Virus record (IMG/VR): IMGVR_UViG_3300037297_000066
Location: 62,001-126,000 of that record
DNA: 64,000 nt
Strand: one strand, 5' to 3'
The notes below the pieces were generated by a model that searched no databases, was not told where the DNA came from, and was given only the letters and a program-made list of their open reading frames with translations. The number at the start of each line of letters is the position of its first letter. Position 1 is the stretch's first letter. Positions 33,793 through 54,240 of the stretch are shown piece after piece. A program made the position numbers and the translations under genes.

Positions 33793-33821
33793 TTGACACC
33801 TGTGAACGGGGGGACTAAACA
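33793..33821 (+). promoter_or_regulatory. Sigma70-like promoter TTGACA-N17-TAAACA
   Basis: Perfect -35, imperfect -10, 10 nt before ATG 33832; preceded by an A6/T6 imperfect inverted repeat. Confidence 0.5.
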
Positions 33822-33831
33822 CTACACACCG

Positions 33832-34164
33832 ATGTTTGGTGACTACGCAAGGGCCCGTCGAGAGGCCAAAGGGATAGGTTTGAGAGAGATAGCCAAGGCT
33901 CTCAAAAAGTCCCCCACGTTCATCTCACGGGTAGAGTTAGGTCACGAGGTCAGAGTAGGAGAAGAGACTTTGGTCAAATGGGCCCACGTTCTTGGAGAGG
34001 ACCCTGACCTGTTCCTAGCCCGAGCCGGAAAACTTCAAACAGACATTCGGGAGGCCATTATGGCCAATCCGGAGATCTTTCTGGAGCTCATCCGGAGGGT
34101 TCGAGCACTTCCTAGGAAGCGTCAAGCAGAGGTGGTTCGCAAGGTCAAAGACGGAGATTGGTAA
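33832..34164 (+). CDS. XRE-family helix-turn-helix regulator
   Basis: FGDYARARREAKGIGLREIAKALKKSPTFISRVELG. Confidence 0.85.
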   Translation: MFGDYARARREAKGIGLREIAKALKKSPTFISRVELGHEVRVGEETLVKWAHVLGEDPDLFLARAGKLQTDIREAIMANPEIFLELIRRVRALPRKRQAEVVRKVKDGDW

Positions 34165-37435: not shown

Positions 37436-37642
37436 GGTGTACAGTAGGGGAGCGAAGCCATTTGCGAGAGGTTCAGTGGCAAGAGTTTCCTAGGGACCGC
37501 TCGAAAGTGTGTGTTCCTTGATAGTTAAACCCTGTTTCCTGCTGGTCAGAGTCTGGTGATATAGGGTCAGAAGACCAGAACTGGACAACCTATCGCAGAG
37601 TCCTGTCCAAAGGTCTGATCTGACACCCCCATTTAGGGGTGG
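37436..37642 (+). promoter_or_regulatory. CRISPR leader 1 with class B promoter motif
   Basis: Near-identical to 46955-47161; starts with GGTGTACAGT; abuts the first repeat. Confidence 0.8.
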
Positions 37643-39603
37643 GTCGAGGGAGGAAAATCCTCTCTCGGGAGTTCCAACCTCAGCATGCCTTAGCCGGCGA
37701 GGAAGACCAACACCAGGTCGAGGGAGGAAAATCCTCTCTCGGGAGTTCCAACTCGTCCCTGCCTCTCGTGAGTTGGGATGCACTGTGCGTCGAGGGAGGA
37801 AAATCCTCTCTCGGGAGTTCCAACGCACTAGCGTACGTGTCCTCGGTGGAGCAGGCGGAGGTCGAGGGAGGAAAATCCTCTCTCGGGAGTTCCAACACGA
37901 GGCTTCGGGCTCGCTGGTCCGGGCTGACGTTCGTCGAGGGAGGGTGATCCTCCCTCGGGAGTTCCAACACCGTTCCATCCCCCTGGTGAACCCAACACGG
38001 AACACGTCGAGGGAGAAAAATCCTCTCTCGGGAGTTCCAACGCACTCGTCCACTGCACCGATAGGGGGCTACCCGTATAGTCGAGGGAGGAAAATCCTCC
38101 CTCGGGAGTTCCAACGGCGAGGTCGAGGATCGCCCCCTGCACTACATCCGGGTCGAGGGAGGGGGATCCTCCCTCGGGAGTTCCAACGATGATCGAGATA
38201 TCCCGGGCCACCCTCAGACCAGCTGTCGAGGGAGGGGTTTCCTCCCTCGGGAGTTTCAAGCCACCATGGGTAGACGCGCCAAGCACGCAAGTCGAGGGAG
38301 GGGGATCCTCCCTCGGGAGTTCCAAGCACGTGCCCGGCACTGGCGACGATTCCCGCTTCGATGTCGAGGGAGGGCAATCCTCTCTCGGGAGTTCCAACAA
38401 TGCACCAGTCGTTGACGACGTTCGCTCCAGGTCGAGGGAGGGGGATCCTCCCTCGGGAGTTCCAACTCCTCCCAGCCCCTGAACTGGGCCTCCACTGCCT
38501 GCAGGTCGAGGGAGGGTCCTCCTCCCTCGGGAGTTCCAACCCGTCACCGCTCGGAGAGACGACCATCACCCAAAGGGTCGAGGGAGGGTGATCCTCCCTC
38601 GGGTGTTCCAAGTGGACGCTCCACCGAATCCACGCCACGAGCGAGTGAAGTCGAGGGAGGGGGATCCTCCCTCGGGAGTTCCAACTGCGGGATCTTTGAG
38701 AATGCGGGGGGTCTGTAGTCTGGTCGAGGGAGGGAAATCCTCTCTCGGGAGTTCCAACATCTCCATTCTTTCGGGTTTCGGATGTGAATCTCTTGGGTCG
38801 AGGGAGGGAAATCCTCTCTCGGGAGTTCCAACCTCACCTTGCGATGCCTGTCGGCCGTCACGAGGGCCATGTCGAGGGAGGGAAATCCTCTCTCGGGAGT
38901 TCCAAGATCTGGCTCTTCGCCCCGGACTTCCTGGTACTGAGCGGTCGAGGGAGGGTTTTCCTTCCTCGGGAGTTCCAAGCAGAAGCTCGTGGACGCTGCC
39001 GTGCCTGCCGATCCCGTGTCGAGGGAGGGGGATCCTCCCTCGGGAGTTTCAATCAGACGGATGACGGTCGCGAGGCCCAGTCGAGGGAGGGTCCTCCTCC
39101 CTCGGGAGTTCTAAGAATCGGACGCTAGGGCCATCGCCCCCATAGCCTGTCGAGGGAGGGGTTTCCTCCCTCGGGAGTTTCAAGCCGGATGATGAGGCGA
39201 GGCTCATCAGCGATGTCGAGGGAGGGAGATCCTCCCTCGGGAGTTTCAACCGATCCCACCACCTCTGAGCGAGGCCGATGGCCATGTCGAGGGAGGGGTT
39301 TCCTCTTTCAGGAGTTCCAAGGCCGGGCCCGACGATCGCTTCGTGCAGCCCGACGACGGGTCGAGGGAGGGAAATCCTCTCTCGGGAGTTCCAAGCGAGA
39401 ACAACCGCATGTGGGTACCTGCCGCACCAGGGGTCGAGGGAGGGTCCTCCTCCCTCGGGAGTTCTAACGGGAGTTCAAAATCCACGGCCGGACGTTGTGA
39501 ATCGGTTGTCTGGTGCGTCGAGGGAGGGTGATCCTCCCTCGGGAGTTTCAATCAAGGCTTTTCGCTAATCGAGAGGGATCATTTCCCTCTCGGGAGTTTC
39601 AAT
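37643..39603 (+). CRISPR. CRISPR array 1: about 28 repeats (27 plus 1 degenerate terminal), ~36 nt, unique spacers mostly ~35-38 nt
   Basis: Consensus GTCGAGGGAGG-N5-CCTC(C/T)CTCGGGAGTT(C/T)CAA(C/G); ~73 nt period; degenerate repeat at the right end defines the trailer. Confidence 0.97.
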
Positions 39604-39709
39604 AAGCGATGCTGTCTCGTAAGTTGCTGAAATAACTAGACTACCCAAAAAAGTGTACGTTTAGAGAAAACCCTTGGAAGAATTCGTTCTAGTTGGTGTA
39701 CGGTAGGGC

Positions 39710-40393
39710 ATGCCTACCCCCCCACTAAAACGAGTCTACGTCAGAGCCTGGGCTGAGCTGGGTTGTTGGAACACTCTTTCCCAGCAAGCCGAGCGCATCT
39801 CCAACATCGTACCCACTCATTCGGCCGTTCGAGGTTTTCTACGATCCATCCTTGGGAAATGGGAAACCGACTACCAGGTCCACGAATGTTGGTTGCTCCG
39901 GGAGCCGGAGTTGACCTCCCATGTCGTTAGCGAGGTCAACTTCAAGCCTACGGTCAACCCGCAAAAGCCCGTTCACATTGAAGGGGCTCGCATCATGCGC
40001 ACGAACACGTGCTTGAGAAACCCGGACTATATGTTCGTGTTCACCCCCATGCGTAGTTGGTGGGGAGACAAGGTCTTCCAAAAGGATCCCACCGAGACTC
40101 ACGAAAAGAACTGGAACATGTCAGTGAGGCGGTTGAAGCACGGTAAGCAACACCGACCGCCCTACTTTGGGATGAGCGACTACCCCGCCTCCTATGAATA
40201 CGTTGACAAGCCTCAACTCAAGCCTGTTCCTGTCAACCGAAACCTCGGCATCATGTACTGGGGGATCGACTACGCAGATCCTCAAGAACCCAGCTACTAC
40301 ACCGCCCTGAGCGTTGTGGACGGTGTAGTCCGTTACCCAACGGTAGAAGAAGTCCGGAAGAACGGCCTCAAATTGACGGATAGGCGATCATGA
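39710..40393 (+). CDS. cas5: Type I-C Cas5 (Cas5d/Cas5c)
   Basis: ERISNIVPTHSAVRGFLRSILGK, SEV, RTNTCLRNPDY, RRLKHG...PYFG, NLGIMYWGIDY, VVDGVVRYP match the Cas5c pattern. Confidence 0.9.
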   Translation: MPTPPLKRVYVRAWAELGCWNTLSQQAERISNIVPTHSAVRGFLRSILGKWETDYQVHECWLLREPELTSHVVSEVNFKPTVNPQKPVHIEGARIMRTNTCLRNPDYMFVFTPMRSWWGDKVFQKDPTETHEKNWNMSVRRLKHGKQHRPPYFGMSDYPASYEYVDKPQLKPVPVNRNLGIMYWGIDYADPQEPSYYTALSVVDGVVRYPTVEEVRKNGLKLTDRRS

Positions 40394-42246
40394 TCACAGC
40401 TCTCTACTCGTTTGGTAAGAACCGGGGGCTGGGATTCGATCCCTACTTCCCCCTGAAGCCCCACTACTACCTTCGACTATCTTCTTCGGGATCCGTGCGA
40501 ATCGAACCCATCAAGGAACCTGAGATCCGCCTCCCAGAGAAGTCCGGACGAAGCAGCAACATCGAGGCCAACTTCCTGTACGACACGGCCATGTACGCTC
40601 TGGCCTTCAACGCCATCCGCAAAGAGCGCTTGCTGACTCAGTTCCTGACTTTTTGGGGCAAGACCCTGGAACATCTGACCAACTGCGAAGACGTGGAAGC
40701 ACTGAAAGCCGTGAAGGCATTCTGCGACCAACTGGCCTTGTCAGAAATCTGCTCCGCCGTGAGTCAATGGGAAAAGAGCTCCAAGAAGCGGCTAGTGAGC
40801 CTTAAAGGCCCGAACCGTATCTCGGGTCTTGCTGAGATCCGGAAGGGACTCTCCGAGGTGGCTTTGGAGACCTTCGAAAGTCTAGCCAGTGGAAAACCCC
40901 CGGCCCCCATTCAAAAGGCCATAGGAGATCTGGCTATAGAAGGAGAGCAGTGGGTCATACTGACTTTGGAGGATGACAACACGCCCCTAGCGCTCAGGCC
41001 CAAGCCTTCTGAGCTGTGGGTTCAGCTCCAAAAGCCTACTGACGACAAGCCCACCAGCACCTGCTTGCTCACAGGGAAACCTTGTAAACCAGTCCGACTA
41101 CACCGGGCTCTCAAGGGTGTACCTGGTGGGGACAAAGGGATTCCTCTCATCTCGTTCGAGCAAGAAGTGACCCGCTACAAGGGCCGCAAGAAGGAAGACA
41201 ACTTCCCCATCAGTCGAGAAGCTCACGACACGTATGTAGCGGCCTTCCGGCACATTGTAGATCAGGGGAATGTCTTCGTGAGCATCAACTCCTGCCTCTT
41301 GGTATGGGTAGATGAGGCCGAGCATGACGAGCTCCTAACCCCCCTGCTGACGGTCCTACGATCCAAGGAAAAGGAGGAGGTCAAAGCAGCCTGGGACGAA
41401 GTAGAACGTCTAGACAGCGACGTCACGGTGCATCTGGCCATGCTTCGTAGCTCCAAGGGCCGCATCTCCATCCTAGGCTATCACACGCTTTCCGTGAATC
41501 AGTTGAGGGCCAACCTTCTCCGATTCCACGAAGAGTTCTCCGAGTTCCCAGAGTACACCCCAAGAGGGTTATTTTCCTGGATGCTCAAGAAGAACATCAA
41601 GGGCAAGGACAAGGAAACAGCCAAGCTCTACACCATGGTGACTTTGGCCGTAGTACTAGGGACTCCTTACCCGTTACAGATCTTCCCTAGCCTCATCCAG
41701 TGGATCAAGAACACGGACAGTGCCCTGGACTTGTTCTTGCATCTTACCTGGCTGCGAGCCTACGTCTGCAGGGACTACGGTATTAACCCGCCTCCTATCA
41801 AAAACCCCTTTCAAAAGGAGCCCCTCGTGTGCGAACCACGCATTGAAGAGAACGTCAACCTCAACGAAACCGACATCGGATACAACCTTGGAAGACTGGT
41901 CGCCTTAGACTGCCATCTGCGCAGAATGACCGGCATCAGTGTCAGTGAGATTTCCGAGGTACGTTCAGCCACCAACAACCCTCACATGTACATCAGCCGG
42001 AGCTACCGGATGCTCCCCACGCTGGAGAAGCTGGAGAAGAAGGGATGGGGGAAGCCTCTCAGGGAGATGCGTGAAGAGGTCAAGGCCAAACTTGCTCCTC
42101 TCGTGGCTACTCCCATTCGTCTAACTCTCCTTGAAGAGTCCAGCTTTCAGATGGCCTTCACGTACCAGAAGACCTACCTTCGCCGCTACAACGCTTGGAG
42201 GAAGCAGCAGTACAAGGCCGCCAAGGCTGCTGAGGAAGAGAACTGA
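40390..42246 (+). CDS. cas8c: Type I-C large subunit Cas8c (Csd1)
   Basis: RSSNIEANFLYD, CLLTGK...RLHRALKGV...LISFE...NFPIS, KGRISI, GYNLGRLVAL; ATGA-coupled to cas5. Confidence 0.88.
   Translation: MITALYSFGKNRGLGFDPYFPLKPHYYLRLSSSGSVRIEPIKEPEIRLPEKSGRSSNIEANFLYDTAMYALAFNAIRKERLLTQFLTFWGKTLEHLTNCEDVEALKAVKAFCDQLALSEICSAVSQWEKSSKKRLVSLKGPNRISGLAEIRKGLSEVALETFESLASGKPPAPIQKAIGDLAIEGEQWVILTLEDDNTPLALRPKPSELWVQLQKPTDDKPTSTCLLTGKPCKPVRLHRALKGVPGGDKGIPLISFEQEVTRYKGRKKEDNFPISREAHDTYVAAFRHIVDQGNVFVSINSCLLVWVDEAEHDELLTPLLTVLRSKEKEEVKAAWDEVERLDSDVTVHLAMLRSSKGRISILGYHTLSVNQLRANLLRFHEEFSEFPEYTPRGLFSWMLKKNIKGKDKETAKLYTMVTLAVVLGTPYPLQIFPSLIQWIKNTDSALDLFLHLTWLRAYVCRDYGINPPPIKNPFQKEPLVCEPRIEENVNLNETDIGYNLGRLVALDCHLRRMTGISVSEISEVRSATNNPHMYISRSYRMLPTLEKLEKKGWGKPLREMREEVKAKLAPLVATPIRLTLLEESSFQMAFTYQKTYLRRYNAWRKQQYKAAKAAEEEN
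41827..42246 (+). CDS. cas11: Putative internally translated Cas11c (139 aa)
   Basis: In-frame GTG with AAGGAG 6 nt upstream, shortly before the GYNLGRL helix. Confidence 0.55.
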   Translation: MCEPRIEENVNLNETDIGYNLGRLVALDCHLRRMTGISVSEISEVRSATNNPHMYISRSYRMLPTLEKLEKKGWGKPLREMREEVKAKLAPLVATPIRLTLLEESSFQMAFTYQKTYLRRYNAWRKQQYKAAKAAEEEN

Positions 42247-42378
42247 TCGTTCAGACAACGGAACGCAGACTTTTGCCGAAAAGTACCGCTACAAGGGTTG
42301 ATTAACCCTCAGGTACTTCAGGTATCAGGAGGTATCTCCTGGGAGTCATCTAGATCGAAATCAAAACAGGAGGGCCTC

Positions 42379-43386
42379 ATGGCTCATTCATCGTATCCAA
42401 AAAACAATGACACCAACGTTTCTATCGTCCCCAACCGAATGGAGATCGTGACTCTCACGGAATATCGGGACGGCACTCCCCAACTGGCGCCTGACGAAAA
42501 CGGCACTCGTCAGGATCCCTTCTCTGGTCAAGGCTTGATCACGGGAGTGGGTACCAAGCGCAAGATTCGGGACTTCGCAGCCCTGCTCGGCCAGTCTCTC
42601 TACGTGGCCCGTCGAGCCGTCTTGAGCCACGCCGTCAACGAAGCAGCTCAAGCCCTGGGGGTGGAAGCCGATGCCAACCAGGAGGAAGAAAGCCCTCCCA
42701 TCGACGAGGACAAGGAAACCGAGCCCGAGCCCAAGAGCAAGGGCAAGAGCAAGGGCAAGAGCAAGGCCAAGGGCAAGGCCAAGAAGGAAAAGAACAAGGA
42801 GCTCGATTACGAAGTTGCCCTGAAGGTCAGGGATGAACTGTGCCGACGGTACTGGGACATCCGGGCATTTGGGGCCGTTCTGTGCAGCCCCGTGAACATC
42901 CCCGTTCGAGGGCCTCTCCAAGTTGGGATGGCCAGGTCTGTGGATCCGATCAACCCCCTCACGCTCTCTATCACCCGGGTCGCTGTGGCTACGGACCGAG
43001 AAGCGGAGGAGCAGAAAGGGCGCAACCACACGATGGGCACCCAGACGGTCGTTCCCTACGGGGTCTACCAGCAACACCACTACTACAACCCCCACGACGC
43101 CGAGGTCACGGGCTTCTCCCAGGAAGACTTTGAGATCTACCTCAGGGCTCTCAGGGAGATGCATGACCACACCAGGTCATGCATGCGGACTGAGGTGGTT
43201 CCTAGGAAGATCGTCATCTTCCGGCACAGCTGCCCTTTGGGCAACGCTCCCAGCCACAAGCTGTTCGAGTTGGTCAAGTTGACCAAGAAGCCGGGGGTTC
43301 CTACCCCCACCTGTTGGGAGGACTACGAGTTCAGCGTGGACGTAGAAAATCTACCTGAAGGGGTGGAAATCGAAGTCATCGGCTGA
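42379..43386 (+). CDS. cas7: Type I-C Cas7 (Csd2)
   Basis: ITGVGTKRKIRD, YWDIRAFGAV, VRGPLQV, SITRVAV, TMG...VPYGVY, TGFSQED, LGNAPSHKLF; GGAGG RBS before ATG 42379. Confidence 0.92.
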   Translation: MAHSSYPKNNDTNVSIVPNRMEIVTLTEYRDGTPQLAPDENGTRQDPFSGQGLITGVGTKRKIRDFAALLGQSLYVARRAVLSHAVNEAAQALGVEADANQEEESPPIDEDKETEPEPKSKGKSKGKSKAKGKAKKEKNKELDYEVALKVRDELCRRYWDIRAFGAVLCSPVNIPVRGPLQVGMARSVDPINPLTLSITRVAVATDREAEEQKGRNHTMGTQTVVPYGVYQQHHYYNPHDAEVTGFSQEDFEIYLRALREMHDHTRSCMRTEVVPRKIVIFRHSCPLGNAPSHKLFELVKLTKKPGVPTPTCWEDYEFSVDVENLPEGVEIEVIG

Positions 43387-43395
43387 CCCCGTGGT

Positions 43396-43433
43396 GTATG
43401 GTGGGAGAGACGAGAAAGCCTCTCCCACCATAC
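43396..43433. other. Perfect 14-bp inverted repeat between cas7 and the helicase
   Basis: GTATGGTGGGAGAG-N10-CTCTCCCACCATAC; no U-tract. Confidence 0.85.
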
Positions 43434-43445
43434 CAGGTCCTAGAA

Positions 43446-45470
43446 ATGCCTAGAAGAATCACTCTCCACAACTTCCAGAGCAGAGACGCTAACCGCCTCT
43501 GCCCTCGGTTCGTTGACCACAAGGTCTTCGCTATCATCTACGCTACTGGAGCAGGCAAGACCTTGGAGATAAGGGCCATCGTTTCTAGGCTGTACCACCA
43601 CCGATACGATCCTGAATACAAGGGGTTCAGTTTCACTCACTGTATTTTTGCGGCCCCCCAACGAGTCATCCGAGACAACTTCATTGAGGACATCTCCGAA
43701 CTGGTGGACGGAAACCTAGTCTACCCCTGTCTCAATGTCGTCACCAACGTAAGTCGAGAGGACCTGGAAAGGTTCCTGGGGCAACGCTGGACCGTAGACC
43801 GTATGTGTATGGCGGTCACCCACAGTATCATCGTAAGGCTGATCCCATGGTTGGAAGAGGCCCTGCGTCAAGACCCTAGCTTTCTCGTGGGAAAAATCCT
43901 GGTTATAGACGAAGCTCACCACATTCCGGCCAAGAGGCTGGCCCAACTGTGTCGGTTATGGAAAGACCACGGTGGACATCTGGTACTCCTGACCGCCACC
44001 CCCAGCCATCCTGACATCGAAAAAGTCATCCCTGACAATGCCATCGTAGCTTGCAGAACTCTGCCGGAGCAGATGGAAGGCGGAAAGTACGCCCCCCAGA
44101 TCCTTGAGACCGGTATCATCAACGTCACCGGAGAGGGGTACTCGGACAAGGAGATGTGTGGGATCCCCGTAGACGCAGACACCGCCATTCAGGAGATTGT
44201 AGACGACTACGAAAAGCAATGCCTGGAAGCCAAATGCAAGCCTCGGGCCCTGGTAATCATCCGACCTCGTAAGACCAGAGAAGAGAACCGGAAGATCATT
44301 GAGCGCTTCCTAGAGTGCTTTGAAGCGAAGGGGGACCTGAACGGTCTCGGGAAGATCCGGCCCGTAGTTGGAGTAGGGGCACACAAGTCGGTTATAGGGG
44401 ATGTGTCTGACTGCATCGCTCACGACAAAGCGATTCATTCAGGGGAGCAATGCACCTGCTCGAAGTGCCGAGGGCTCCCGTACCGGAGACTGACCTTCAA
44501 AGACTCCAACTACGATGTCCTGATTCTGATTGGCCGAGGACGAGAAGGGCTGGATACCGTTCTAGCCAGTCACATGTACCTGTTCGGCCTATGCCACTTC
44601 TTGCCTTCGGTGGGGCAGCTTCTGGGACGCATTATGCGTTGGCGTAAAGAGGTTCTCGACTACCCTGACAAGTGGCGGAACAGATCCTACCTCCGCATCA
44701 TCACGGCCGGAGTCAAAAATCTGGCAGCCCACAGTCAGCAGGTACTGTTGACTATGCACTACCTCAACCTCCTAGGCTTGCAACAGTGGAGTGTCCTGAG
44801 CCTAGTCAGCCGAATTGTTGACAAGATGGCTTCAAAGGCAGGCCACCCTCGACTCGGTGGAAAGCGTATTCCCTACATCACCTTGGAGAAGCGAGCCGCC
44901 ATTCTCACCTACCATAGTGAGATGATGAAGTGGTACAACGAAGGCTCTTCTCAGAATGAGCGAAATCACGGGGCCCCCCTCAACAAAGTACTGACTCGTA
45001 ATGAGCAGGCTAAGCTCACACTCAGTAGGATAGAGTTGGGTTGCCTCAGGCTAAAAGGAGCCCCTAAGGACAAGATCACCGAAGCAGAGATCCTCTTGGT
45101 CCTCACTGACCTTGAAGCCTCCTTCCACCGTGAGCAAAAAGAGGCCCTCCAAAGAGAGTTGTGGAAAGCCTTGGAAGAGCTGTTGCCCGAGGAAGGGGTG
45201 ATGAGTGCCGTCAACAGAGCTCTGGTTCAAGTGGCCTCCTCATTCCGAGAAGCCACTCTAAGCTACTCCCTGCTTGCCAGCCGGGTTCAACAGGAAATCC
45301 TGAGCTTGACTACTGAGCATATTGAAGACTTCTCAGCCCGCTTGGACGAGGCCCTCAAGAACAGCACGGCTCAAGCAGAAAAGAAACTGGAGACCCGCTA
45401 CGGGTACTCCCCCGGAACCTTGGAGACGTTCCGAAGAACCATAGCCAACCACCCGCCGGGTGTAAGATGA
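43446..45470 (+). CDS. SF2 DEAH helicase, restriction-enzyme/RadD-like rather than Cas3; no HD domain
   Basis: YATGAGKT ~30 aa from the start, IDEAHH, LTATP, GREGLD, QLLGRIMR; Cys-rich insert CTCSKC. The alternative start 43398 lies inside the hairpin. Confidence 0.85.
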   Translation: MPRRITLHNFQSRDANRLCPRFVDHKVFAIIYATGAGKTLEIRAIVSRLYHHRYDPEYKGFSFTHCIFAAPQRVIRDNFIEDISELVDGNLVYPCLNVVTNVSREDLERFLGQRWTVDRMCMAVTHSIIVRLIPWLEEALRQDPSFLVGKILVIDEAHHIPAKRLAQLCRLWKDHGGHLVLLTATPSHPDIEKVIPDNAIVACRTLPEQMEGGKYAPQILETGIINVTGEGYSDKEMCGIPVDADTAIQEIVDDYEKQCLEAKCKPRALVIIRPRKTREENRKIIERFLECFEAKGDLNGLGKIRPVVGVGAHKSVIGDVSDCIAHDKAIHSGEQCTCSKCRGLPYRRLTFKDSNYDVLILIGRGREGLDTVLASHMYLFGLCHFLPSVGQLLGRIMRWRKEVLDYPDKWRNRSYLRIITAGVKNLAAHSQQVLLTMHYLNLLGLQQWSVLSLVSRIVDKMASKAGHPRLGGKRIPYITLEKRAAILTYHSEMMKWYNEGSSQNERNHGAPLNKVLTRNEQAKLTLSRIELGCLRLKGAPKDKITEAEILLVLTDLEASFHREQKEALQRELWKALEELLPEEGVMSAVNRALVQVASSFREATLSYSLLASRVQQEILSLTTEHIEDFSARLDEALKNSTAQAEKKLETRYGYSPGTLETFRRTIANHPPGVR

Positions 45471-46183
45471 ACCTTGTAAAATTCAACAAACAGCCCTGGA
45501 GGTTGCGAACCTTTCAGAGCATGCGTAGTGAAAGCAGATTGTGGGATGGGTTTAAGCTGCGAGGGATCTACGCAGAGATGACAGCTCTTTCTGGCCACGA
45601 AATGTACCTCATCCTAAAAGAACACAAGGCTCTTGAAAAGCCTTACTACTTCGTAGGCTCTGATCTCAATGTGAAAGTCTACGTAGAACTCAGGGAAGAC
45701 AAGGAACGTGGGAAAATCCCGTGGACGGTAGCCTTCGGGGACATCATTCAAGTAGTCCAACAGATCATCCACAACAAGGATGGCCTCCCTGTTGCCGTTC
45801 TGAACATGGATGGGTTTGATCAGGTAGGGGGAAGCAAGTGGTGGAGTGAGACGGCCTCCCCCCTCGTAGAGATTGTCGAGGATTCCGTCAGGCGTCTAGG
45901 CAGTTTCATGTTGATTCTCAACAAGACCCTCGACACCCGAACCAAGAGTGATCCACTAGAGGCTTTGAGAACCCAGACGGCCCTCCTTTGCAAGGTCTTC
46001 GGCAAACGTTGGCCCTTGAGTCATAGCGACATCGTAACAGACATCCCCCCAGAAGTAGCCAACCGCAGCTTCGTAGGAGACGTGGGCGCCTTCCAGATCT
46101 ACAAGAGCAAAGGACGCCAGCTTCGAATGGCTACCTTGAGACTGGCTTTTCAACCCAGAAGAATTGTGGCCAAGCTTAGCTAG
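45467..46183 (+). CDS. Hypothetical, possible class I SAM-dependent methyltransferase-like fold
   Basis: Strand order YAEMTALSG / FVGSDLN / AFGDI / VLNMDGF mirrors motifs I-IV; ATGA-coupled to the helicase. Confidence 0.5.
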   Translation: MNLVKFNKQPWRLRTFQSMRSESRLWDGFKLRGIYAEMTALSGHEMYLILKEHKALEKPYYFVGSDLNVKVYVELREDKERGKIPWTVAFGDIIQVVQQIIHNKDGLPVAVLNMDGFDQVGGSKWWSETASPLVEIVEDSVRRLGSFMLILNKTLDTRTKSDPLEALRTQTALLCKVFGKRWPLSHSDIVTDIPPEVANRSFVGDVGAFQIYKSKGRQLRMATLRLAFQPRRIVAKLS

Positions 46184-46211
46184 TAACCCAACCCATAACC
46201 AGAGGAATCCG

Positions 46212-46421
46212 ATGTCCAAATCCAAAGACAGCTTCAACTCCGACGTCGTTCTCACGTTCGCCCAAAAGGCCAAGCGCTTCACGACTCAAGGTGTAGCAGG
46301 ACGCTTCAAGGTCCCCAAGCAGAGGGCCGCAGCGTGTATCGCCATCCTTCGTATCAAGGAAGTGGTCGAGTCCGACGGCAAGACCAGAGACGGCGACAGC
46401 AAGTGGGTCTACTGCGGGTAA
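46212..46421 (+). CDS. Small winged-helix DNA-binding-like protein
   Basis: AGAGGA RBS; FTTQGVAGRFKVPKQRAAACIAILRIKEVV plus a C-terminal beta hairpin. Confidence 0.55.
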   Translation: MSKSKDSFNSDVVLTFAQKAKRFTTQGVAGRFKVPKQRAAACIAILRIKEVVESDGKTRDGDSKWVYCG

Positions 46422-46714
46422 TTAGGCTCCACCATCGAAAACCTGTCCCGATCTTGATGGGGCATGACGCCCAAAAGGCGTTCCCAAGCTGTACGGGGAA
46501 CCTCTGGCTTCTTAGGTAAAGGCGTAGGAGCCGGAGGGAGCCCCGCTGATAGCCTTTTGTTCCGGTGGTACTCGTTGTCCACCCAGGACACGAAACGCCT
46601 TAGGGAGGGCTCCAGACGGTGTTCTCGGAGCTTTTCTCGGGCTTCGAACAAGAGACAGACGATGTCCTTCTGTTCTCGAAGGGTCAGTTGGCTAAACATG
46701 TAGGATAACGACAT
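46409..46714 (-). CDS. Hypothetical with W-tag (RTAWERLL)
   Basis: GTG-TAGGTA-N5-ATG start. Confidence 0.6.
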   Translation of the reverse strand: MSLSYMFSQLTLREQKDIVCLLFEAREKLREHRLEPSLRRFVSWVDNEYHRNKRLSAGLPPAPTPLPKKPEVPRTAWERLLGVMPHQDRDRFSMVEPNYPQ

Positions 46715-46773
46715 ACCCTTACCTACACTGGCCTACACTTAGTGTCAAGTCCTACTTGTGGTACTCTCAGGGC

Positions 46774-46947
46774 ATGAAGATAGACGGCAAACAGCTATGT
46801 CTGGCCTGCGGGACGAACGTGGCCACCCGGATGGACGGGACAGTCCCCCTCTGTGACTCGTGTGCAAGTCACGTCACAGACCGACGAGGGGTCCGATTCG
46901 ACAACCCTCGCCTCACGAAGGACGAAATTCCTCCAAACGTTCACTAG
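46774..46947 (+). CDS. Small Zn-finger protein
   Basis: CLAC...CDSC; TG-G-TACTCT-N6-ATG. Confidence 0.55.
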   Translation: MKIDGKQLCLACGTNVATRMDGTVPLCDSCASHVTDRRGVRFDNPRLTKDEIPPNVH

Positions 46948-46954
46948 GTGGTTT

Positions 46955-47161
46955 GGTGTACAGTAGGGGAGCGAAGCCATTTGCGAGAGGTTCAGTGCTA
47001 CCCGTAGCCTAGGGACCGCTCGAAAGTGTGTGTTCCTTGATAGTTAAACCCTGTTTCCTGCTGGTCAGAGCCTGGTGATACAGGGTCAGAAGATCAGAGC
47101 TGGACAACCTATCGCAGAGTTCTGTCCAAAGGTCTGATCTGACACCCCTATTTAGGGGTGA
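46955..47161 (+). promoter_or_regulatory. CRISPR leader 2 (duplicate of leader 1)
   Basis: Same sequence apart from one 11-nt block and about 7 scattered substitutions. Confidence 0.8.
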
Positions 47162-49116
47162 GTCGAGGGAGGGCAATCCTCTCTCGGGAGTTTCAACGAG
47201 CGACAACATCGTGCGGACCGTCGCCAGCTGCAACGTCGAGGGAGGGGGATCCTCCCTCGGGAGTTTCAACCGGGGCAGCTACCTTCCTTTCGAGCGGTAC
47301 ACGTTGGGTCGAGGGAGGGGATCCTCCCTCGGGAGTTTCAACGTAGCTCACGTAGGCGTTCTCGGAATCGCCGGTACCTCGTCGAGGGAGGGTCCTCCTC
47401 CCTCGGGAGTTCCAAGCAGCTACTCGACGCTTTGGGCAAGCCGAATGACATCAAGTCGAGGGAGGAAAATCTTCCCTCGGGAGTTCCAAGGAGCTCGGGT
47501 CCAGGTGACTCAGACTGGTACATCTGGGTCGAGGGAGGGGATCCTCCCTCGGGAGTTCCAAGTAGGTAGTGCTCGACTGGCGTGGTCATTCGGCCTCTAC
47601 GTCGAGGGAGGGGATCCTCCCTCGGGAGTTCCAAGTGGACCACCTCGGGTGGCAGTCGCCCCGATACTAGGGTCGAGGGAGGAAAATCTTCCCTCGGGAG
47701 TTCCAAGAGATCGTCGGACATCACACCACCTCCAGCAGCTGCGAGGTCGAGGGAGGAAAATCTTCCCTCGGGAGTTCCAAGGAACGAAACTGACGGATAC
47801 TCAGCCAGCGCGTTAACGGTCGAGGGAGGGGGATCCTCCCTCGGGTGTTTCAACGAAGGACGGACACAGCAAGCCACGGACAGAGGTCGAGGGAAGGAAA
47901 TCCTCCCTCGGGAGTTCCAACTGACCCGCCTTTCGGGCAAGAGCCGCCTGGCTCGTCGAGGGAGGGTGATCCTCCCTCGGGAGTTTCAACCCGAACGCGG
48001 TAGTGGCAGCCGTGCCCCACCCCACGTCGAGGGAGGGTCCTCCTCCCTCGGGAGTTCCAACACCATATCGAAGGGAGCAGAAGCCATGAAGCAGAGTCGA
48101 GGGAGGAAAATCTTCCCTCGGGAGTTCCAAGGTACGCGAGCCTCGCGACGGTTCTGACCACAGGTGTCGAGGGAGGAAAATCTTCCCTCGGGAGTTCCAA
48201 GTCGGGGTAACGCCGTTGGCCTTGCGGCGAGTCGAGGGAGGGGTTTCCTCCCTCGGGAGTTCCAAGAGTTTGCTCAGCCGGGGTGGGTGCGTCGGAGTGC
48301 GTAGTCGAGGGAGGGGTTTCCTCCCTCGGGAGTTCCAAGATCAGCGTTCAGCGCCCATGAGATTTGATCGTGATGAGTCGAGGGAGGGTCCTCCTCCCTC
48401 GGGAGTTCCAAGTCGGGACCAGTGCCCCAGACCGCGCTGAAGTTGATGTCGAGGGAGGAAAATCTTCCCTCGGGAGTTCCAAGAGAAGCCTCGTCCCCCT
48501 TCTCCCTTTCTTCTTCCAGCGTCGAGGGAGGGGGATCCTCCCTCGGGAGTTTCAACTAAAGACCGCCGCGTCTTCCAGTTCCGCCACGAGCGGTCGAGGT
48601 AGGGGGATCCTCCCTCGGGAGTTTCAAGTTGTACACGGTGGTCGTCCCCACCTTGAGGGCACGGTCGAGGGAGGAAAATCTTCCCTCGGGAGTTCCAAGG
48701 AGGACTACCAGGCGAGGCAGGCCAAGGACGTGTTCAAGGTCGAGGGAGGGGGATCCTCCCTCGGGAGTTCCAAGACGCCCGGACCTGACGAGCCCGTAGT
48801 CCCTCCAGAAGTCGAGGGAGGGAAATACTCCCTCGGGAGTTCCAAGAGCGCCCTGATGCGTCTGGATGAAAGCTTCGCTGCCGTCGAGGGAGGAAAATCC
48901 TCCCTCGGGAGTTCCAAGAGGACGGACGACGGACGCCATTCTGTCGCTTGCTTCTTGTCGAGGGAGGGTCCTCCTCCCTCGGGAGTTCCAAGAGCTAGTC
49001 ATCCCACGGGCGTTCCGTTCGACTCGAAGTCGAGGGAGGGGGATCCTCCCTCGGGAGTTCCAAGAATGTCAGGAAGCAGTGTCGAGGGAGGGAGATCCTT
49101 CCTCGGGAATTTCAAT
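47162..49116 (+). CRISPR. CRISPR array 2: about 28 repeats, same repeat family as array 1
   Basis: Counted by eye; last spacer is only ~16 nt and the last repeat is degenerate (GAATTTCAAT). Confidence 0.97.
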
Positions 49117-50455: not shown

Positions 50456-51772
50456 ATGACACCCAAACGAATTGCACTCTTGGTCACCTCTCTCATCGTG
50501 ATGGGGGTGGTAACGATCTTGGGCTTCAAGGTCGTATGCAACGTGGACGACACCGAGATCGTCGTCCTGCAAGAACTCGACGGCGACATGGAAGTATGGA
50601 GTACTGCCGGTTGGCGCTACCAGGGATTTGGGAAGGTCACCCGTTACCCCAAGTCTCAGGAGTACACCTTCCAGCATCAAGAAGACGACCAAGGCACCAT
50701 CACCAGCACGAAGGAATGCTTGCCCATCCGCTTCAACGACAAGGGCAAGGCGGTGATTTCCGGCAACCTGTCTTGGGACATGCCGACAGATCCCGAACAG
50801 GTATTGGCCTTGCACAGCAAATACCGAAACTCTGAGGGTATCGAGAATCGGCTCGTGAAACCCGCCGTGAATCGAGCCATCTACCACTCCGGCCCCCTGA
50901 TGTCATCCAAGGAATCAGCAGGACAACGTCGTGGTGAGTTGATTCGGTTCATCCAAGATCAAGCCATCCAGGGCGTCTACAAGACCGTTTCCCGAGAGGT
51001 CGAGGAAATCGACCATCTGGCTCCTCCCGTGGAAGTAGTCGAAAAGGTCAGGGAAGCGAAGCTCGACGACAAGGGTGACCCAATGCTCGACGACAAGGGC
51101 GATCCCATCATGATCGAGGTCCCCAAGAAGGTGAAGAAGCCGGCCACCAAGAAGATCACCGTCTACGAGCCTGAAATGAAGGACGGTCAACCCTTAGTGG
51201 AAGAGGAAAGCAACGCCACGAAGTTCGGAGTTCTCCTCCACAACATCACGATCAAGAGCATCATCTACGAGCCCAAGGTTCAGGAACAGATCAACGCTCA
51301 ACGTGACATGGAGATGTCTGTCCAGACCAAGATCGCTGAAGCCAGCAAGGCCAAGCAAGATGCTGTGACGGCTGAGGAAAAAGGGAAGGCTGAAGCTGCC
51401 AAGGCCAAGTGGGAGCAGGAAGTCAAGAAGGCCCAGGCCCTCACGGCTGCCGAACAAAAGCAGGAAGTGGCCAAGAAAGACCTAGAGGCCGCCAAACTTG
51501 AACGTGAGGCTGCGATCGAACGAGCCAAAGGCGAGTCCGAGGCCAAACGACTCGTGATGCAAGCTGACGGGGCCCTTCAGCAGAAGTTGGCAGCCTGGGT
51601 CGAAGTGCAAAAGGCATACGCTGCTCAGATGGGCAAACAACGATGGGTGCCGACTATCCAGATGGGAGAAGGTTCGAGTGGAGGGGGAGCTGCTGCCGGT
51701 TTCATGCAACTCATGCAGGCTCAAGCTGCACGTCAGCTCAACCTCGACATGCAGATGGGTAGAAAGAGATAA
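50456..51772 (+). CDS. SPFH/band 7 domain protein
   Basis: N-terminal TM, IRFNDKGKA...SWDMP...LVKPAV, coiled-coil AEA/AKA tail; AAGGA RBS. Confidence 0.85.
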   Translation: MTPKRIALLVTSLIVMGVVTILGFKVVCNVDDTEIVVLQELDGDMEVWSTAGWRYQGFGKVTRYPKSQEYTFQHQEDDQGTITSTKECLPIRFNDKGKAVISGNLSWDMPTDPEQVLALHSKYRNSEGIENRLVKPAVNRAIYHSGPLMSSKESAGQRRGELIRFIQDQAIQGVYKTVSREVEEIDHLAPPVEVVEKVREAKLDDKGDPMLDDKGDPIMIEVPKKVKKPATKKITVYEPEMKDGQPLVEEESNATKFGVLLHNITIKSIIYEPKVQEQINAQRDMEMSVQTKIAEASKAKQDAVTAEEKGKAEAAKAKWEQEVKKAQALTAAEQKQEVAKKDLEAAKLEREAAIERAKGESEAKRLVMQADGALQQKLAAWVEVQKAYAAQMGKQRWVPTIQMGEGSSGGGAAAGFMQLMQAQAARQLNLDMQMGRKR

Positions 51773-53003: not shown

Positions 53004-53411
53004 TTGATTCCCAAAGTCGGCTCCTGGTGGCGAACCAAGAGCGCCCAGTGGCCCAGTACGGCTTTTTTACTCACAGGCTTCAGGGACGTCTTCCACGAGG
53101 TGGTTTCCATCACTGAAGAGGACGTCTGCCTGATCCAAAACGGAGCGGACCGGCCCTACTTCATCCCCAAAGACGAATTCGACCAAGGAAAGTTCAAGCC
53201 TTTCCGGCCCCGAGGCTCAATACCTTCGTGGGTGAGACCGGGGGTCCTTTTTCGTAGACCCCGGGGAAAAACCTGGACAGTCACGACGGTTCGAGGAAGG
53301 TTCTTCACCGCCGAGATCAGGTACGGCACCTTTCGGTTCTTCAGTCCTGACGAGATTTCGAACTTACGGCCGTACCTGACGTGGCACGAGCGACTTCTAT
53401 CTACAGATTGA
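53004..53411 (+). CDS. Hypothetical with W-tag variant (LTWHERLL)
   Basis: Two SH3-like repeats; tag. Confidence 0.6.
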   Translation: MIPKVGSWWRTKSAQWPSTAFLLTGFRDVFHEVVSITEEDVCLIQNGADRPYFIPKDEFDQGKFKPFRPRGSIPSWVRPGVLFRRPRGKTWTVTTVRGRFFTAEIRYGTFRFFSPDEISNLRPYLTWHERLLSTD

Positions 53412-54240
53412 GGAACTGCGAGCTTCCCTCGTTCGGCCGAGCGTGGAGATAGCGGCTAGTAGTCGCCACGTTGGCGTGCCCGAGGGTTGCTTGCACGAGG
53501 TGTATGGGGGCCCCGTTGTCCAGGGCATGGCTAGCATGAGCGTGACGCAGCCAGTGAGGGGAAGCCTTCTCGCCGATGGCATCAGCGGTCTCGTAGATGA
53601 TCTGCCGAGCTTCTCGGACACACAGAGGGTTGCCTCGCCGGCTCTTGAACACGAGGCTATGGTCGGTGTCGTTCTTCCAACGAAGTTTTCGGAGCTCGTT
53701 GACGAACTGGGCAGAGAGCTTGACGGTTCGGGTCTTACCGCCCTTCCCGTGGAAGGTGACCCTGTCGATGCTCAGGTCCGCCCATGTAAGGTTCACGGTT
53801 TCGGTGATACGGGATCCCGCCGCATATAGCAGCTTGATGAGCAGGTAGTTGCGGCCAGGCTCTGCTGCGGCCAGCAATCCCTGAACGGTTTCCTCGTTCA
53901 GGATTCTCTCGTGGAGAGTGTCTCTCACTGAGGGGGCCTTCAGGATGAGGGCCACGTTGAACACCGTGTAGCCGGTCTGGTGAGCGTACTTCATGAGGCT
54001 CTTGACCGAGCGGATCCGGCGGGCCTTCGTCGCTGGGGAGCCCACCAGGGATTCAGCATAGCGAACCACGTGGTCCACCTTGGCTTCCTGAAGACCTACA
54101 TTCTCCGACTCTAGGAACTCCAAGAACATCTGGGCATCCCGGGAGTACGCTATGGCTGTATTTTCAGGACGACCCGACAGCCAAAGTTGAACCAAATGCT
54201 TGTCGGAAGTAGCGCCGGAGTAGTTTTCAGGAAGCCGCAT
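53401..54240 (-). CDS. Tyrosine recombinase, XerC/XerD-like
   Basis: GSRITE (R), GKGGK (K), PHWLRHAHASH, LGHANVATTSRY (HxxR, H, Y). Confidence 0.95.
   Translation of the reverse strand: MRLPENYSGATSDKHLVQLWLSGRPENTAIAYSRDAQMFLEFLESENVGLQEAKVDHVVRYAESLVGSPATKARRIRSVKSLMKYAHQTGYTVFNVALILKAPSVRDTLHERILNEETVQGLLAAAEPGRNYLLIKLLYAAGSRITETVNLTWADLSIDRVTFHGKGGKTRTVKLSAQFVNELRKLRWKNDTDHSLVFKSRRGNPLCVREARQIIYETADAIGEKASPHWLRHAHASHALDNGAPIHLVQATLGHANVATTSRYLHARPNEGSSQFLNL

What the first reader, a model, noticed from the sequence alone, without database searches (positions are those of the whole stretch)
37436..49116. Type I-C Cascade with two large arrays but no Cas3 and no adaptation genes
Seen: leader-array1-cas5c-cas8c-cas7c-helicase-ORF-wHTH-leader-array2, all on the + strand, with about 54 spacers. 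No HD nuclease, cas1, cas2 or cas4 is recognisable anywhere in the 64 kb. Established: I-C interference needs the Cas3 HD nuclease, and Cascade alone binds DNA and can silence transcription. Element-borne Cas3-less type I systems are known in general. Inference: either a non-cutting RNA-guided system using the adjacent genes as effectors, or one that borrows host Cas3 and Cas1-2 to fight competing elements.
Basis: partly seen in the sequence, partly recalled or inferred. Interest (0 to 1): 0.8.

Follow-up and report, generated by a model that had tools for sequence, protein, structure and literature searches.

The report
Phage Cascade with helicase and methyltransferase partners
A 437-kb wetland phage carries a CRISPR system with no DNA-cutting or spacer-acquiring genes; it pairs its RNA-guided complex with a conserved helicase, a methyltransferase-like protein and a small DNA-binding protein, a published but functionally untested design.

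Summary
Two arrays (28 repeats and 27 spacers each, with 93%-identical leaders) flank cas5c-cas8c-cas7c. Cas1, Cas2, Cas4, Cas6, the Cas3 core, the Cas3 HD domain and any generic HD domain are absent.

The genes after cas7c are not bystanders:
- The 690-aa protein is an SF2 ATPase with intact motifs but is not Cas3-like.
- The "ORF" (238 aa) belongs to an unannotated family. Its confident model (pLDDT 94.8) has a class I SAM-methyltransferase fold, and the SAM-site acidic residues are conserved.
- The 85-aa protein is a winged-helix protein.

The order cas5-cas8c-cas7-helicase-methyltransferase(-wHTH) recurs in at least five distant metagenomic lineages (25-36% identity). One distant relative fuses a helicase to the methyltransferase-like domain. 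The same layout is in a phage genome of Al-Shayeb et al. 2020, who reported a "type I-C variant ... with a helicase instead of Cas3".

This is therefore a new member of a known but uncharacterised kind. The most likely mechanism is nuclease-free, type IV-A-like interference by a Cascade-recruited helicase-methyltransferase module. No spacer target was found. Borrowing a host Cas3 is unsupported but not excluded.

The parts
37436..37642 (+). Leader of array 1
   Evidence: The 243-nt block 37436-37678 is 93% identical to 46955-47197 (D7; alignment). The simple scan finds no sigma-70 consensus promoter.
37643..39602 (+). CRISPR array 1: 28 repeats of 35/36 nt, 27 spacers
   Evidence: The repeats share a 9-bp stem and the 3' handle GGAGTT(C/T)CAA(S). 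The last repeat (39568-39602) has a fully compensated different stem.
39710..40393 (+). cas5c (227 aa), presumed pre-crRNA endonuclease and Cascade subunit
   Evidence: PF09704 E 7e-9. PADLOC Cas5c E 6.5e-23. Full-length alignment to the Cas5c chains of type I-C entries 8dex/7kha. No Cas6 in the genome.
40390..42246 (+). cas8c/csd1 (618 aa), large subunit
   Evidence: PF09709 E 2e-50 covering residues 27-595; no extra domain. Below the NCBIfam equivalog cut-off (123 vs 218 bits), so it is divergent.
42298..43386 (+). cas7c/csd2 (362-aa ORF; homology starts near residue 45)
   Evidence: TIGR02589 at 225 bits, above its 182-bit cut-off. PF05107 E 1.5e-59. It is the only Cas7 in the genome.
43398..45470 (+). 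SF2 (ResIII/DEAD-like) helicase, 690 aa, sitting in place of Cas3
   Evidence: PF04851/PF00270 cover the N-terminal half only. Motifs TGAGKT, DEAHH, TATP and QxxGRxxR are invariant among relatives. No Cas3 model or Cas3 structure matches. The nearest clusters are generic ResIII/DEAD helicases. It lies next to cas7c in all relatives with enough flank.
45467..46183 (+). 238-aa protein with a class I SAM-dependent methyltransferase fold (unannotated family)
   Evidence: No Pfam, NCBIfam, PADLOC or PDB sequence hit. The family has 142 representatives. AF2 model: pLDDT 94.8, pTM 0.91. All top structural matches are methyltransferases. Conserved residues: K8, E37, D66, D92, D115, N152.
46164..46421 (+). 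Small winged-helix-turn-helix protein (85-aa ORF; the likely start is the Met at residue 17, position 46212)
   Evidence: Homologues follow the methyltransferase gene in L003, L009 and L011 (47-50% identity for L003 and L011) and in the published phage. Atlas features and structure point to MarR/ArsR/FeoC-like wHTH, TM 0.73-0.80.
46955..47161 (+). Leader of array 2 (a duplicate of leader 1)
47162..49115 (+). CRISPR array 2: 28 repeats, 27 spacers (the last spacer is truncated to 17 nt)

Best explanation
This is a complete, phage-borne derivative of a type I-C CRISPR system. Cas3 and the adaptation genes have been replaced by a dedicated three-gene module: a non-Cas3 SF2 helicase, a SAM-methyltransferase-fold protein and a small winged-helix protein.

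Proposed working:
1. Both arrays are transcribed from their duplicated leaders. Cas5c cuts the hairpin repeats.
2. Cas5c-Cas8c-Cas7c assemble on the crRNAs. The complex forms R-loops on foreign DNA that is richer in G+C than the phage.
3. Instead of Cas3, Cascade recruits the helicase with its methyltransferase-fold partner.
4. ATP-driven translocation or unwinding from the R-loop blocks transcription or replication of the target, as type IV-A Cascade does with CasDinG. The methyltransferase either modifies the exposed nucleic acid or acts as an adaptor.

Shown here: the gene content, the absences, the conserved synteny, the intact ATPase motifs and the methyltransferase fold. Inferred: complex formation, recruitment, lack of cutting, and what gets methylated.
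For: - Cascade genes and arrays are intact.
- No Cas1/2/4/6, Cas3 core, Cas3 HD or any HD domain in the complete genome, with a working positive control.
- The order cas5-cas8c-cas7-helicase-methyltransferase recurs in L001/L002, L003, L009 and L010/L011, and helicase-methyltransferase in L004, at only 25-36% identity. It also occurs in SR-VP_PHAGE_CIR_63_141 of Al-Shayeb 2020.
- P0142 fuses a ResIII helicase to the methyltransferase-like domain.
- The helicase ATPase motifs are invariant.
- The methyltransferase model is confident and matches only methyltransferases. The acidic residues at the ends of strands 1-4 are conserved.
- Neither Cas8c nor Cas5c carries an inserted nuclease domain.
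- The helicase C-terminal third is predicted all-helical, with no conserved acidic or histidine cluster.
- Spacers average 63% G+C against 55% for the genome, and none matches the phage itself.
Against: - No protospacer was found, so the target and PAM are unknown.
- The helicase model is poor (pLDDT 47), so a novel nuclease fold in it cannot be ruled out.
- In the window's methyltransferase-fold protein, the first glycine of the SAM loop is alanine (78 of 83 relatives have glycine). No canonical (D/N)PP(Y/F) motif is present, so activity and substrate are open.
- Neither leader has a recognisable promoter by the simple scan.
- No expression or interaction data exist.
Confidence: 0.5

Rival explanations
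1. The system still destroys its targets. The helicase unwinds from the R-loop, and a nuclease not recognisable by sequence does the cutting. That nuclease could lie in the helicase C-terminal region, elsewhere in the phage, or in the host.
For: A helicase in Cas3's functional slot suggests a Cas3-like processive role. Independent helicase-nuclease solutions exist, such as DinG-HNH (PMC10910872). The helicase model is too poor to exclude a new fold. Most of the phage's genes have no annotation.
Against: No HD, Cas3_HD or Cas4 domain in 437 kb. No nuclease family hit in any locus gene or flanking gene. The region after helicase motif VI is helical, and its invariant residues are aromatic or aliphatic rather than catalytic. 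The conserved partner is a methyltransferase fold, not a nuclease.
Confidence: 0.2
2. The phage Cascade and arrays rely on the host's type I-C Cas3 for interference and on host Cas1-Cas2(-Cas4) for new spacers. The helicase module has an unrelated job.
For: Arrays are large and their stems intact. Contigs from a second wetland sample carry two repeat-flanked spacers absent from this assembly, so array content changes between populations. Acquisition in trans is documented for type IV-A3 (bioRxiv 10.1101/2023.06.23.546257, listed).
Against: The repeat occurs in none of 185,579 species genomes and in no other IMG/VR contig. Cas8c and Cas5c are far below the canonical I-C cut-offs, which argues against compatibility with a host Cas3. 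The helicase module is syntenic with cas7c in every relative. Repeat loops are a mosaic of 11 variants rather than copies of the leader-proximal repeat, and relatives' arrays are decayed. That pattern fits recombination and loss better than polarised acquisition.
Confidence: 0.12
3. RNA-guided methylation is the actual output. Cascade and the helicase deliver the methyltransferase to a chosen locus, to mark DNA or a transcript. The mark might silence the target, protect it, or sensitise it to modification-dependent nucleases.
For: SAM-site acidic residues are conserved family-wide and D115 is invariant at the catalytic strand-4 position. The protein is tightly coupled to, and in one case fused with, a helicase that would expose single strands. 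The nearest solved structures include nucleic-acid methyltransferases such as METTL16, RlmI/RlmO, Trm5 and RlmCD.
Against: No DNA-methyltransferase motif IV and no target-recognition domain. Fold neighbours equally include small-molecule and protein methyltransferases. The window's copy has Ala for the conserved Gly in the SAM loop. No such natural system is known.
Confidence: 0.13
4. The locus is a decaying relic with no current function.
For: It lacks adaptation genes. Spacer lengths are irregular (16-49 nt) and both terminal spacers are truncated. Related arrays are degenerate.
Against: All six ORFs are intact, and catalytic motifs are conserved across lineages at 25-36% identity. Of 504 stem positions, 499 still pair. 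The design persists in several distant phages.
Confidence: 0.05

Closest known systems
Type I-C variant of huge phages (Al-Shayeb et al. 2020, Nature 578:425; example SR-VP_PHAGE_CIR_63_141)
   Same: It sits on a huge phage and has Cas5, Csd1/Cas8c and Cas7 with no Cas1/Cas2 and 'a helicase protein instead of Cas3'. In the deposited genome, the gene after cas7 is a helicase with the same FTHxIxAAPQ / DEAHH / TATPS motifs. It is followed by a 231-aa protein with the family motifs of the methyltransferase-fold protein, then an array, then a small protein of the same wHTH family.
   Different: Its helicase is longer (908 vs 690 aa). The published phages also carry a second, CasPhi system; here no other array exists. 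This phage has two arrays with duplicated leaders flanking the operon. The published record annotates the helicase, the 231-aa protein and the small protein only as hypothetical proteins. I compared the sequences by eye on motifs and did not align them.
Canonical type I-C CRISPR-Cas (Desulfovibrio vulgaris / Bacillus halodurans type)
   Same: It has a Cas5c-Cas8c-Cas7c Cascade, no Cas6, and a hairpin repeat with a conserved 3' handle.
   Different: It lacks the Cas3 HD-helicase and cas4-cas1-cas2. Repeats are 35/36 nt with variable loops. Cas5c and Cas8c score below the NCBIfam cut-offs. It has an extra helicase, methyltransferase-fold and wHTH module.
Type IV-A CRISPR-Cas (Csf Cascade + CasDinG)
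   Same: Both are carried on mobile elements, lack an adaptation module and a nuclease, and have a dedicated SF2 helicase encoded beside the Cascade genes. Type IV-A interference works by silencing rather than cutting (PMC11519345, abstract).
   Different: The Cascade subunits here are I-C, not Csf. The helicase is ResIII/DEAD-like and does not match the type IV DinG model. There is no Cas6-like Csf5. Type IV-A has no methyltransferase partner.
Cas3-less type I derivatives (Tn7-CAST I-F3/I-B; Cas8-HNH and Cas5-HNH; Cas8-Cas5 fusion 'incomplete I-C')
   Same: These are also type I Cascades that lost Cas3 and took on a different effector (10.1101/154229, listed; PMC10910872).
   Different: There are no transposition genes and no HNH insertion in Cas5 or Cas8. 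The effector here is a helicase with a methyltransferase-fold protein.
Type I / type III restriction-modification enzymes (SF2 'Res' motor + SAM methyltransferase)
   Same: Both pair a ResIII-family SF2 ATPase with a Rossmann-fold methyltransferase. The best, weak PDB sequence hit of the helicase profile is a type I R subunit.
   Different: This is an analogy only. No endonuclease domain, no specificity or target-recognition domain, and no (D/N)PP(Y/F) motif are present. Specificity would come from the crRNA.

Membership tests
Type I-C CRISPR-Cas (canonical) | Cas5c, Cas8c (Csd1) and Cas7c (Csd2) Cascade genes | tested here: met
   Cas7c is above its curated cut-off. Cas5c and Cas8c are significant but below the equivalog cut-offs.
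Type I-C CRISPR-Cas (canonical) | Cas3 with an HD nuclease and a Cas3-type helicase core | tested here: not met
   TIGR01587, PF18019, TIGR01596 and PF01966 have no match in the whole genome. The locus helicase does not match Cas3 models or structures.
Type I-C CRISPR-Cas (canonical) | Adaptation module cas4-cas1-cas2 | tested here: not met
   PF01867, PF09827 and PF01930 are absent from the whole genome.
Type I-C CRISPR-Cas (canonical) | No Cas6; a hairpin repeat processed by Cas5c | tested here: inconclusive
   Cas6 is absent and the repeat hairpin is conserved. Cas5c catalytic residues and processing were not tested.
Huge-phage type I-C variant (Al-Shayeb 2020) | I-C-like Cas5/Cas8c/Cas7 on a huge phage genome, lacking Cas1 and Cas2 | tested here: met
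   A 437-kb virus record with terminal repeats, and an HK97 capsid hit. The absences are as listed above.
Huge-phage type I-C variant (Al-Shayeb 2020) | A non-Cas3 helicase encoded next to cas7 in place of Cas3 | tested here: met
   The published genome's helicase shows the same family-specific motifs in the same position. This was a motif-level comparison, not a computed alignment.
Type IV-A CRISPR-Cas | Csf1/Csf2/Csf3/Csf5 subunits and a DinG-family helicase | tested here: not met
   The subunits match I-C models only. The window's helicase gets no typeIV_DinG hit in PADLOC.
Class I SAM-dependent methyltransferases | Rossmann-like seven-stranded sheet with a strand 6-7 hairpin | tested here: met
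   AF2 pLDDT 94.8. Foldseek probability 1.0 to many methyltransferases. VIA Z up to 11.7, with 370 chains at Z >= 8, all listed ones methyltransferases.
Class I SAM-dependent methyltransferases | SAM-binding motifs: an acidic residue plus Gly-rich loop after strand 1, and acidic residues at the ends of strands 2 and 3 | tested here: inconclusive
   E37 (E/D in 80 of 83), D66 (D/E in 80 of 83) and D92 (D/N in 77 of 83) are conserved. G40 is Gly in 78 of 83 relatives but Ala in the window's protein.
Class I SAM-dependent methyltransferases | Methyl transfer from SAM to a defined substrate | not testable with these tools
   Needs biochemistry. D115 at the strand-4 catalytic position is invariant, but no known motif IV is present.

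The most novel reading that the evidence does not exclude
The Cascade-helicase-methyltransferase module is a natural RNA-guided nucleic-acid methylation machine. The crRNA picks the site, the helicase opens or tracks along the DNA, and the methyltransferase writes a mark that silences, protects or condemns the target. This would be a new output class for CRISPR systems.
Probability: 0.13. Interest if true: 0.9.

Novelty: new member of a known kind. Interest (0 to 1): 0.6.

Why it matters
Nuclease-free CRISPR systems on mobile elements (type IV, CASTs) have each revealed a new use of RNA guidance. This phage variant was noted in 2020 but never explained.

This work shows that its "helicase instead of Cas3" always travels with a methyltransferase-fold protein and a winged-helix protein, and that a distant relative fuses a helicase to the methyltransferase-like domain. 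That turns a vague "incomplete system" into a defined six-gene module with testable catalytic residues.

If the methyltransferase is active on the target, it would be a natural programmable methylation system. If it is not, the system is still a second, independent case of helicase-based, cut-free interference, used by huge phages against competitors or hosts.

Tried and rejected
- **Cas3 in disguise.** The helicase profile hits only generic SF2 motif V-VI regions of HsdR, RapA, UvrB, RadD and XPB. It hits no Cas3 chain, and the Atlas neighbours are generic ResIII/DEAD clusters. Rejected.
- **Helicase structure.** The AF2 model from 4 sequences was too poor to search with (pLDDT 47). A profile search found no more relatives.
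- **Nuclease in flanking genes.** Ten neighbours have no nuclease or cas domain. Only an XRE-type HTH, an SPFH protein and an integrase further away were recognised.
- **Self-targeting or regulatory partial matches.** The best own-genome matches are 14-17 nt, lie outside the seed and look like chance.
- **Spacer targets.**
  - All 54 spacers were compared with GenBank phages and PLSDB plasmids.
  - All but the 16-nt last spacer of array 1 were compared with the fetched loci.
  - Six spacers were searched by exact seed-end pattern: two in JGI metagenome contigs and four in IMG/VR.
  - Nothing was found.
- **Host via repeat or Cas7c.** The repeat is in no species genome. The Cas7c pattern search in genome contigs gave no relative.
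- **Relatives in IMG/VR** by helicase, methyltransferase alignment or repeat: none (one search failed on a too-diverse alignment). None in GenBank phages by tblastn.
- **Whole-record Cas1 search of relatives' contigs.** Not possible, because the records are not held.
- **Rfam.** No CRISPR repeat family or other RNA in the locus.
- **Literature.** No functional follow-up of this variant was found. The 2022 Cell paper on virus-encoded CRISPR systems is not held.

Full report
**What is there**

The window is bases 62,001-126,000 of a single 437,331-bp virus record with direct terminal repeats, G+C 55%. The record has an HK97-type capsid match above the Pfam cut-off and a weak large-terminase ATPase match. 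Near-identical sequence occurs in several wetland metagenome runs.

At 37436-49116 the + strand carries, in order:
- a ~207-nt leader
- array 1, 37643-39602
- cas5c
- cas8c
- cas7c
- a 690-aa helicase
- a 238-aa ORF
- an 85-aa ORF
- about 530 nt without a convincing gene
- a second copy of the leader (the 243-nt blocks are 93% identical)
- array 2, 47162-49115

Each array has 28 repeats and 27 spacers, 54 spacers in all.

The Cascade assignments are solid:
- Cas7c scores 225 bits against TIGR02589, whose cut-off is 182.
- Cas8c matches PF09709 at E 2e-50 over nearly its whole length.
- Cas5c matches I-C Cas5 models and aligns end to end with the Cas5c chains of solved type I-C structures.

**What is missing**

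The absences were tested on the whole phage genome in six frames. There is no Cas1, Cas2, Cas4, Cas6, Cas3 helicase core, Cas3 HD (two models) or even a generic HD domain. The same procedure finds Cas7 once, at the right place. No third array and no array with another repeat exists. Neither Cas8c nor Cas5c has an inserted nuclease domain.

**The helicase**

The protein has Pfam ResIII/DEAD matches in its N-terminal half. Walker A (TGAGKT), DEAHH, TATP and QxxGRxxR motifs are invariant among its relatives, so it should be an active SF2 ATPase.

It is not recognisably Cas3:
- No Cas3 family model reaches significance.
- A profile of six family members hits only the generic motif V-VI region of HsdR, RapA, UvrB, RadD and XPB in the PDB, and no Cas3 chain.
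- Its nearest clusters in the ESM Atlas are ordinary ResIII/DEAD helicases.

The last ~250 residues are predicted helical, and their invariant positions are aromatic or aliphatic. My structure model was poor (pLDDT 47 from four sequences), so a novel fold there is not excluded.

Close relatives are very rare. There are four in a word-indexed search of 5.8 billion proteins, and none in GenBank phages or IMG/VR.

**The 238-aa ORF**

It has no Pfam, NCBIfam, PADLOC or PDB sequence match. An exhaustive profile search found a family of 142 representatives, nearly all 200-285 aa.

With 83 of them as the alignment, AlphaFold2 gave a confident model (pLDDT 94.8, pTM 0.91). The model has alternating strands and helices ending in a strand hairpin. 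Every structural search returns class I SAM-dependent methyltransferases:
- Foldseek probability 1.0 against dozens of PDB methyltransferases.
- An AlphaFold DB cluster annotated as class I SAM methyltransferase at TM 0.77.
- VIA-align Z up to 11.7 (METTL16), with 370 chains at Z >= 8.
- Only methyltransferases among reviewed proteins.
- RNA-methyltransferase clusters, a spermidine-synthase cluster of the same fold, and two unannotated clusters, one half viral, in the Atlas.

Family conservation falls where SAM enzymes need it:
- E/D at the end of strand 1, followed by a Gly-rich loop.
- D/E at the end of strand 2.
- D at the end of strand 3.
- An invariant D115 at the end of strand 4.
- An invariant K8 and a near-invariant N152.

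Two cautions apply. The window's copy has alanine where 78 of 83 relatives have the first loop glycine. There is no canonical (D/N)PP(Y/F) motif. The fold is certain; activity is likely; the substrate is unknown.

**The 85-aa ORF**

Its C-terminal ~60 residues are conserved in small genes that follow the methyltransferase gene in three other loci. Atlas features and predicted structure place it among MarR/ArsR/FeoC/FaeA-type winged-helix proteins, TM 0.73-0.80. The Atlas holds the sequence only from residue 17, read as Met (46212). A start there would remove the overlap with the preceding gene. The 79-aa ORF at 46464-46703 has no relatives and is probably not a gene.

**Are these genes part of the system?**

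The synteny says yes. The helicase's few relatives, at 25-28% identity, all sit directly after cas7, and each is followed by a methyltransferase-family gene:
- L001/L002 and an 86.6-kb JGI contig: cas5-cas8c-cas7-helicase-methyltransferase-array.
- L003: the same genes plus the wHTH gene.
- L004: helicase-methyltransferase, with the contig cut upstream.
- L009, on a 207-kb contig: all five genes, a small ORF, then an array.
- L010/L011: cas8c-cas7-helicase-methyltransferase-wHTH.

None of these shows cas1, cas2, cas3 or cas4 within the 10-kb flanks.

A more distant family member, P0142, is a single 918-aa protein with an N-terminal ResIII helicase and a C-terminal methyltransferase-like domain. 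This fusion argues that the two proteins work together. Some distant family members lie in other contexts (L005, L007). The pair may therefore be an older module that this Cascade captured.

**Already described**

Al-Shayeb et al. [quoted passage not shown] Their Extended Data Fig. 9 treats the Cas5 and the "unidentified helicase".

Their deposited genome SR-VP_PHAGE_CIR_63_141 shows the layout on the complement strand:
- Cas5, Csd1 and Cas7.
- A 908-aa "hypothetical protein" with the family-specific FTHxIxAAPQ, DEAHH and TATPS motifs.
- A 231-aa "hypothetical protein" carrying the methyltransferase-family motifs.
- An array region.
- A 78-aa protein of the same wHTH family.

I compared these by eye, not by computed alignment. 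The window's system is a further, divergent member of this published variant. I found no later functional study. A large 2023 survey of rare CRISPR systems that I read mentions no such methyltransferase association. The 2022 Cell survey of viral CRISPR systems is not held, so I cannot claim priority for the methyltransferase assignment.

**Arrays**

The repeat folds into a 9-bp stem. Of 504 stem positions, 499 pair, 22 of them as G-U. The stem is followed by the handle GGAGTT(C/T)CAA(S). The 4-5-nt loop has 11 variants, interleaved through both arrays rather than graded from the leader. The terminal repeat of array 1 has a fully compensated different stem.

Spacers are mostly 36-39 nt but range from 16 to 49. 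The 49-nt one begins with what looks like a remnant of a repeat handle.

Arrays in relatives are more decayed still: stems are eroded, spacing is irregular and only the handle is kept. This is what arrays look like when they are kept by selection on crRNA function but are not renewed by Cas1-Cas2.

Even so, contigs from a second sample carry two repeat-flanked spacers that the assembly lacks. Array content therefore differs among populations. The cause could be loss, recombination or acquisition in trans.

**Targets**

Spacers average 63% G+C against 55% for the phage, and none matches the phage genome beyond chance. They come from foreign, G+C-richer DNA.

I found no protospacer:
- none in GenBank phages or PLSDB plasmids
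- none in the fetched loci
- none in exact-pattern scans with six spacers of JGI metagenome contigs and IMG/VR

The PAM and the target class remain unknown.

**Mechanism**

The best-supported reading is a self-contained, nuclease-free effector. Cas5c matures the crRNAs. The I-C-type Cascade forms an R-loop. In place of Cas3 it recruits the dedicated helicase together with its methyltransferase-fold partner. The wHTH protein probably regulates the operon or helps DNA binding.

By analogy with type IV-A systems, the helicase would turn a static roadblock into efficient silencing or replication interference. Those systems are likewise element-borne, lack adaptation genes and carry a helicase instead of a nuclease (PMC11519345).

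The role of the methyltransferase is the open and interesting point. It could modify the target, modify an RNA, or act as an adaptor.

Rival readings, in decreasing order of confidence, are an unrecognised nuclease (0.2), methylation as the main output (0.13), dependence on host Cas3 and Cas1-2 (0.12) and a non-functional relic (0.05). The host-dependence rival is disfavoured because the repeat is absent from 185,579 species genomes and because the helicase module stays syntenic with cas7c in every relative. It is not excluded.

**Verdict**

The kind of system is already in the literature, so this is a new member of it. Its conserved composition is now better defined: Cascade, an SF2 helicase, a SAM-methyltransferase-fold protein and a wHTH protein. 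Its function is untested and potentially unusual.

Noticed in passing
window 37643-39602 and 47162-49115: The loop of the repeat hairpin has 11 sequence variants (AAAAT 14, GGGAT 11, GTCCT 7, GAAAT 6, GGTTT 5 and others). They are interleaved in both arrays, while the stem and handle are kept. The last repeat of array 1 has a fully compensated alternative stem. This looks like shuffling of repeat-spacer cassettes rather than polarised acquisition.
   Followed up: partly
window 38502-38540 and 39259-39433 (run X2 contigs): Contigs of a second wetland sample carry two repeat-flanked spacers (34 and 28 nt) that occur nowhere in the assembled phage genome. Array content therefore differs between populations.
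   Followed up: partly
window 39468-39516: The 49-nt 'spacer' 26 of array 1 starts with a sequence resembling the repeat's 3' handle (GGGAGTTCAAA). It is probably a remnant of a repeat lost by deletion.
   Followed up: no
all 53 extracted spacers (the 16-nt last spacer of array 1 not included): Spacers average 63% G+C against 55% for the phage genome, which points to G+C-richer targets. The published relative phage's file name, SR-VP_PHAGE_CIR_63_141, may encode 63% G+C; that is my reading of the name only.
   Followed up: no
L005:801-3557 (protein P0142): A 918-aa protein fuses an N-terminal ResIII helicase to a C-terminal domain of the methyltransferase-fold family. No Cascade genes lie within the 6.2-kb contig. 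The helicase-methyltransferase pair may exist as a stand-alone module.
   Followed up: partly
L001:7232-9727 and L009:11164-12765: Arrays next to related systems are strongly degenerate. The 3' handle (GATTGAAAT or GATTGCAAC) is kept, while stems erode and spacing becomes irregular.
   Followed up: partly
window 53401-54240 (-): A tyrosine integrase (phrog_1, E 5e-44) lies 4 kb downstream of array 2 in a 437-kb phage genome.
   Followed up: no
window 15038-16243 (+), 50456-51772 (+), 33793-34164 (+), 6209-7321 (-): Other recognisable genes in the window are a radical-SAM protein, an SPFH/Band 7 protein, an XRE-type HTH regulator and an endolysin-like protein. Most other ORFs have no family.
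   Followed up: no
window 44448-44480 (helicase residues ~351-361): The window's helicase has a lineage-specific insertion containing a C-x-C-x2-C cysteine cluster between the two RecA-like halves. It is absent from the three relatives aligned.
   Followed up: no
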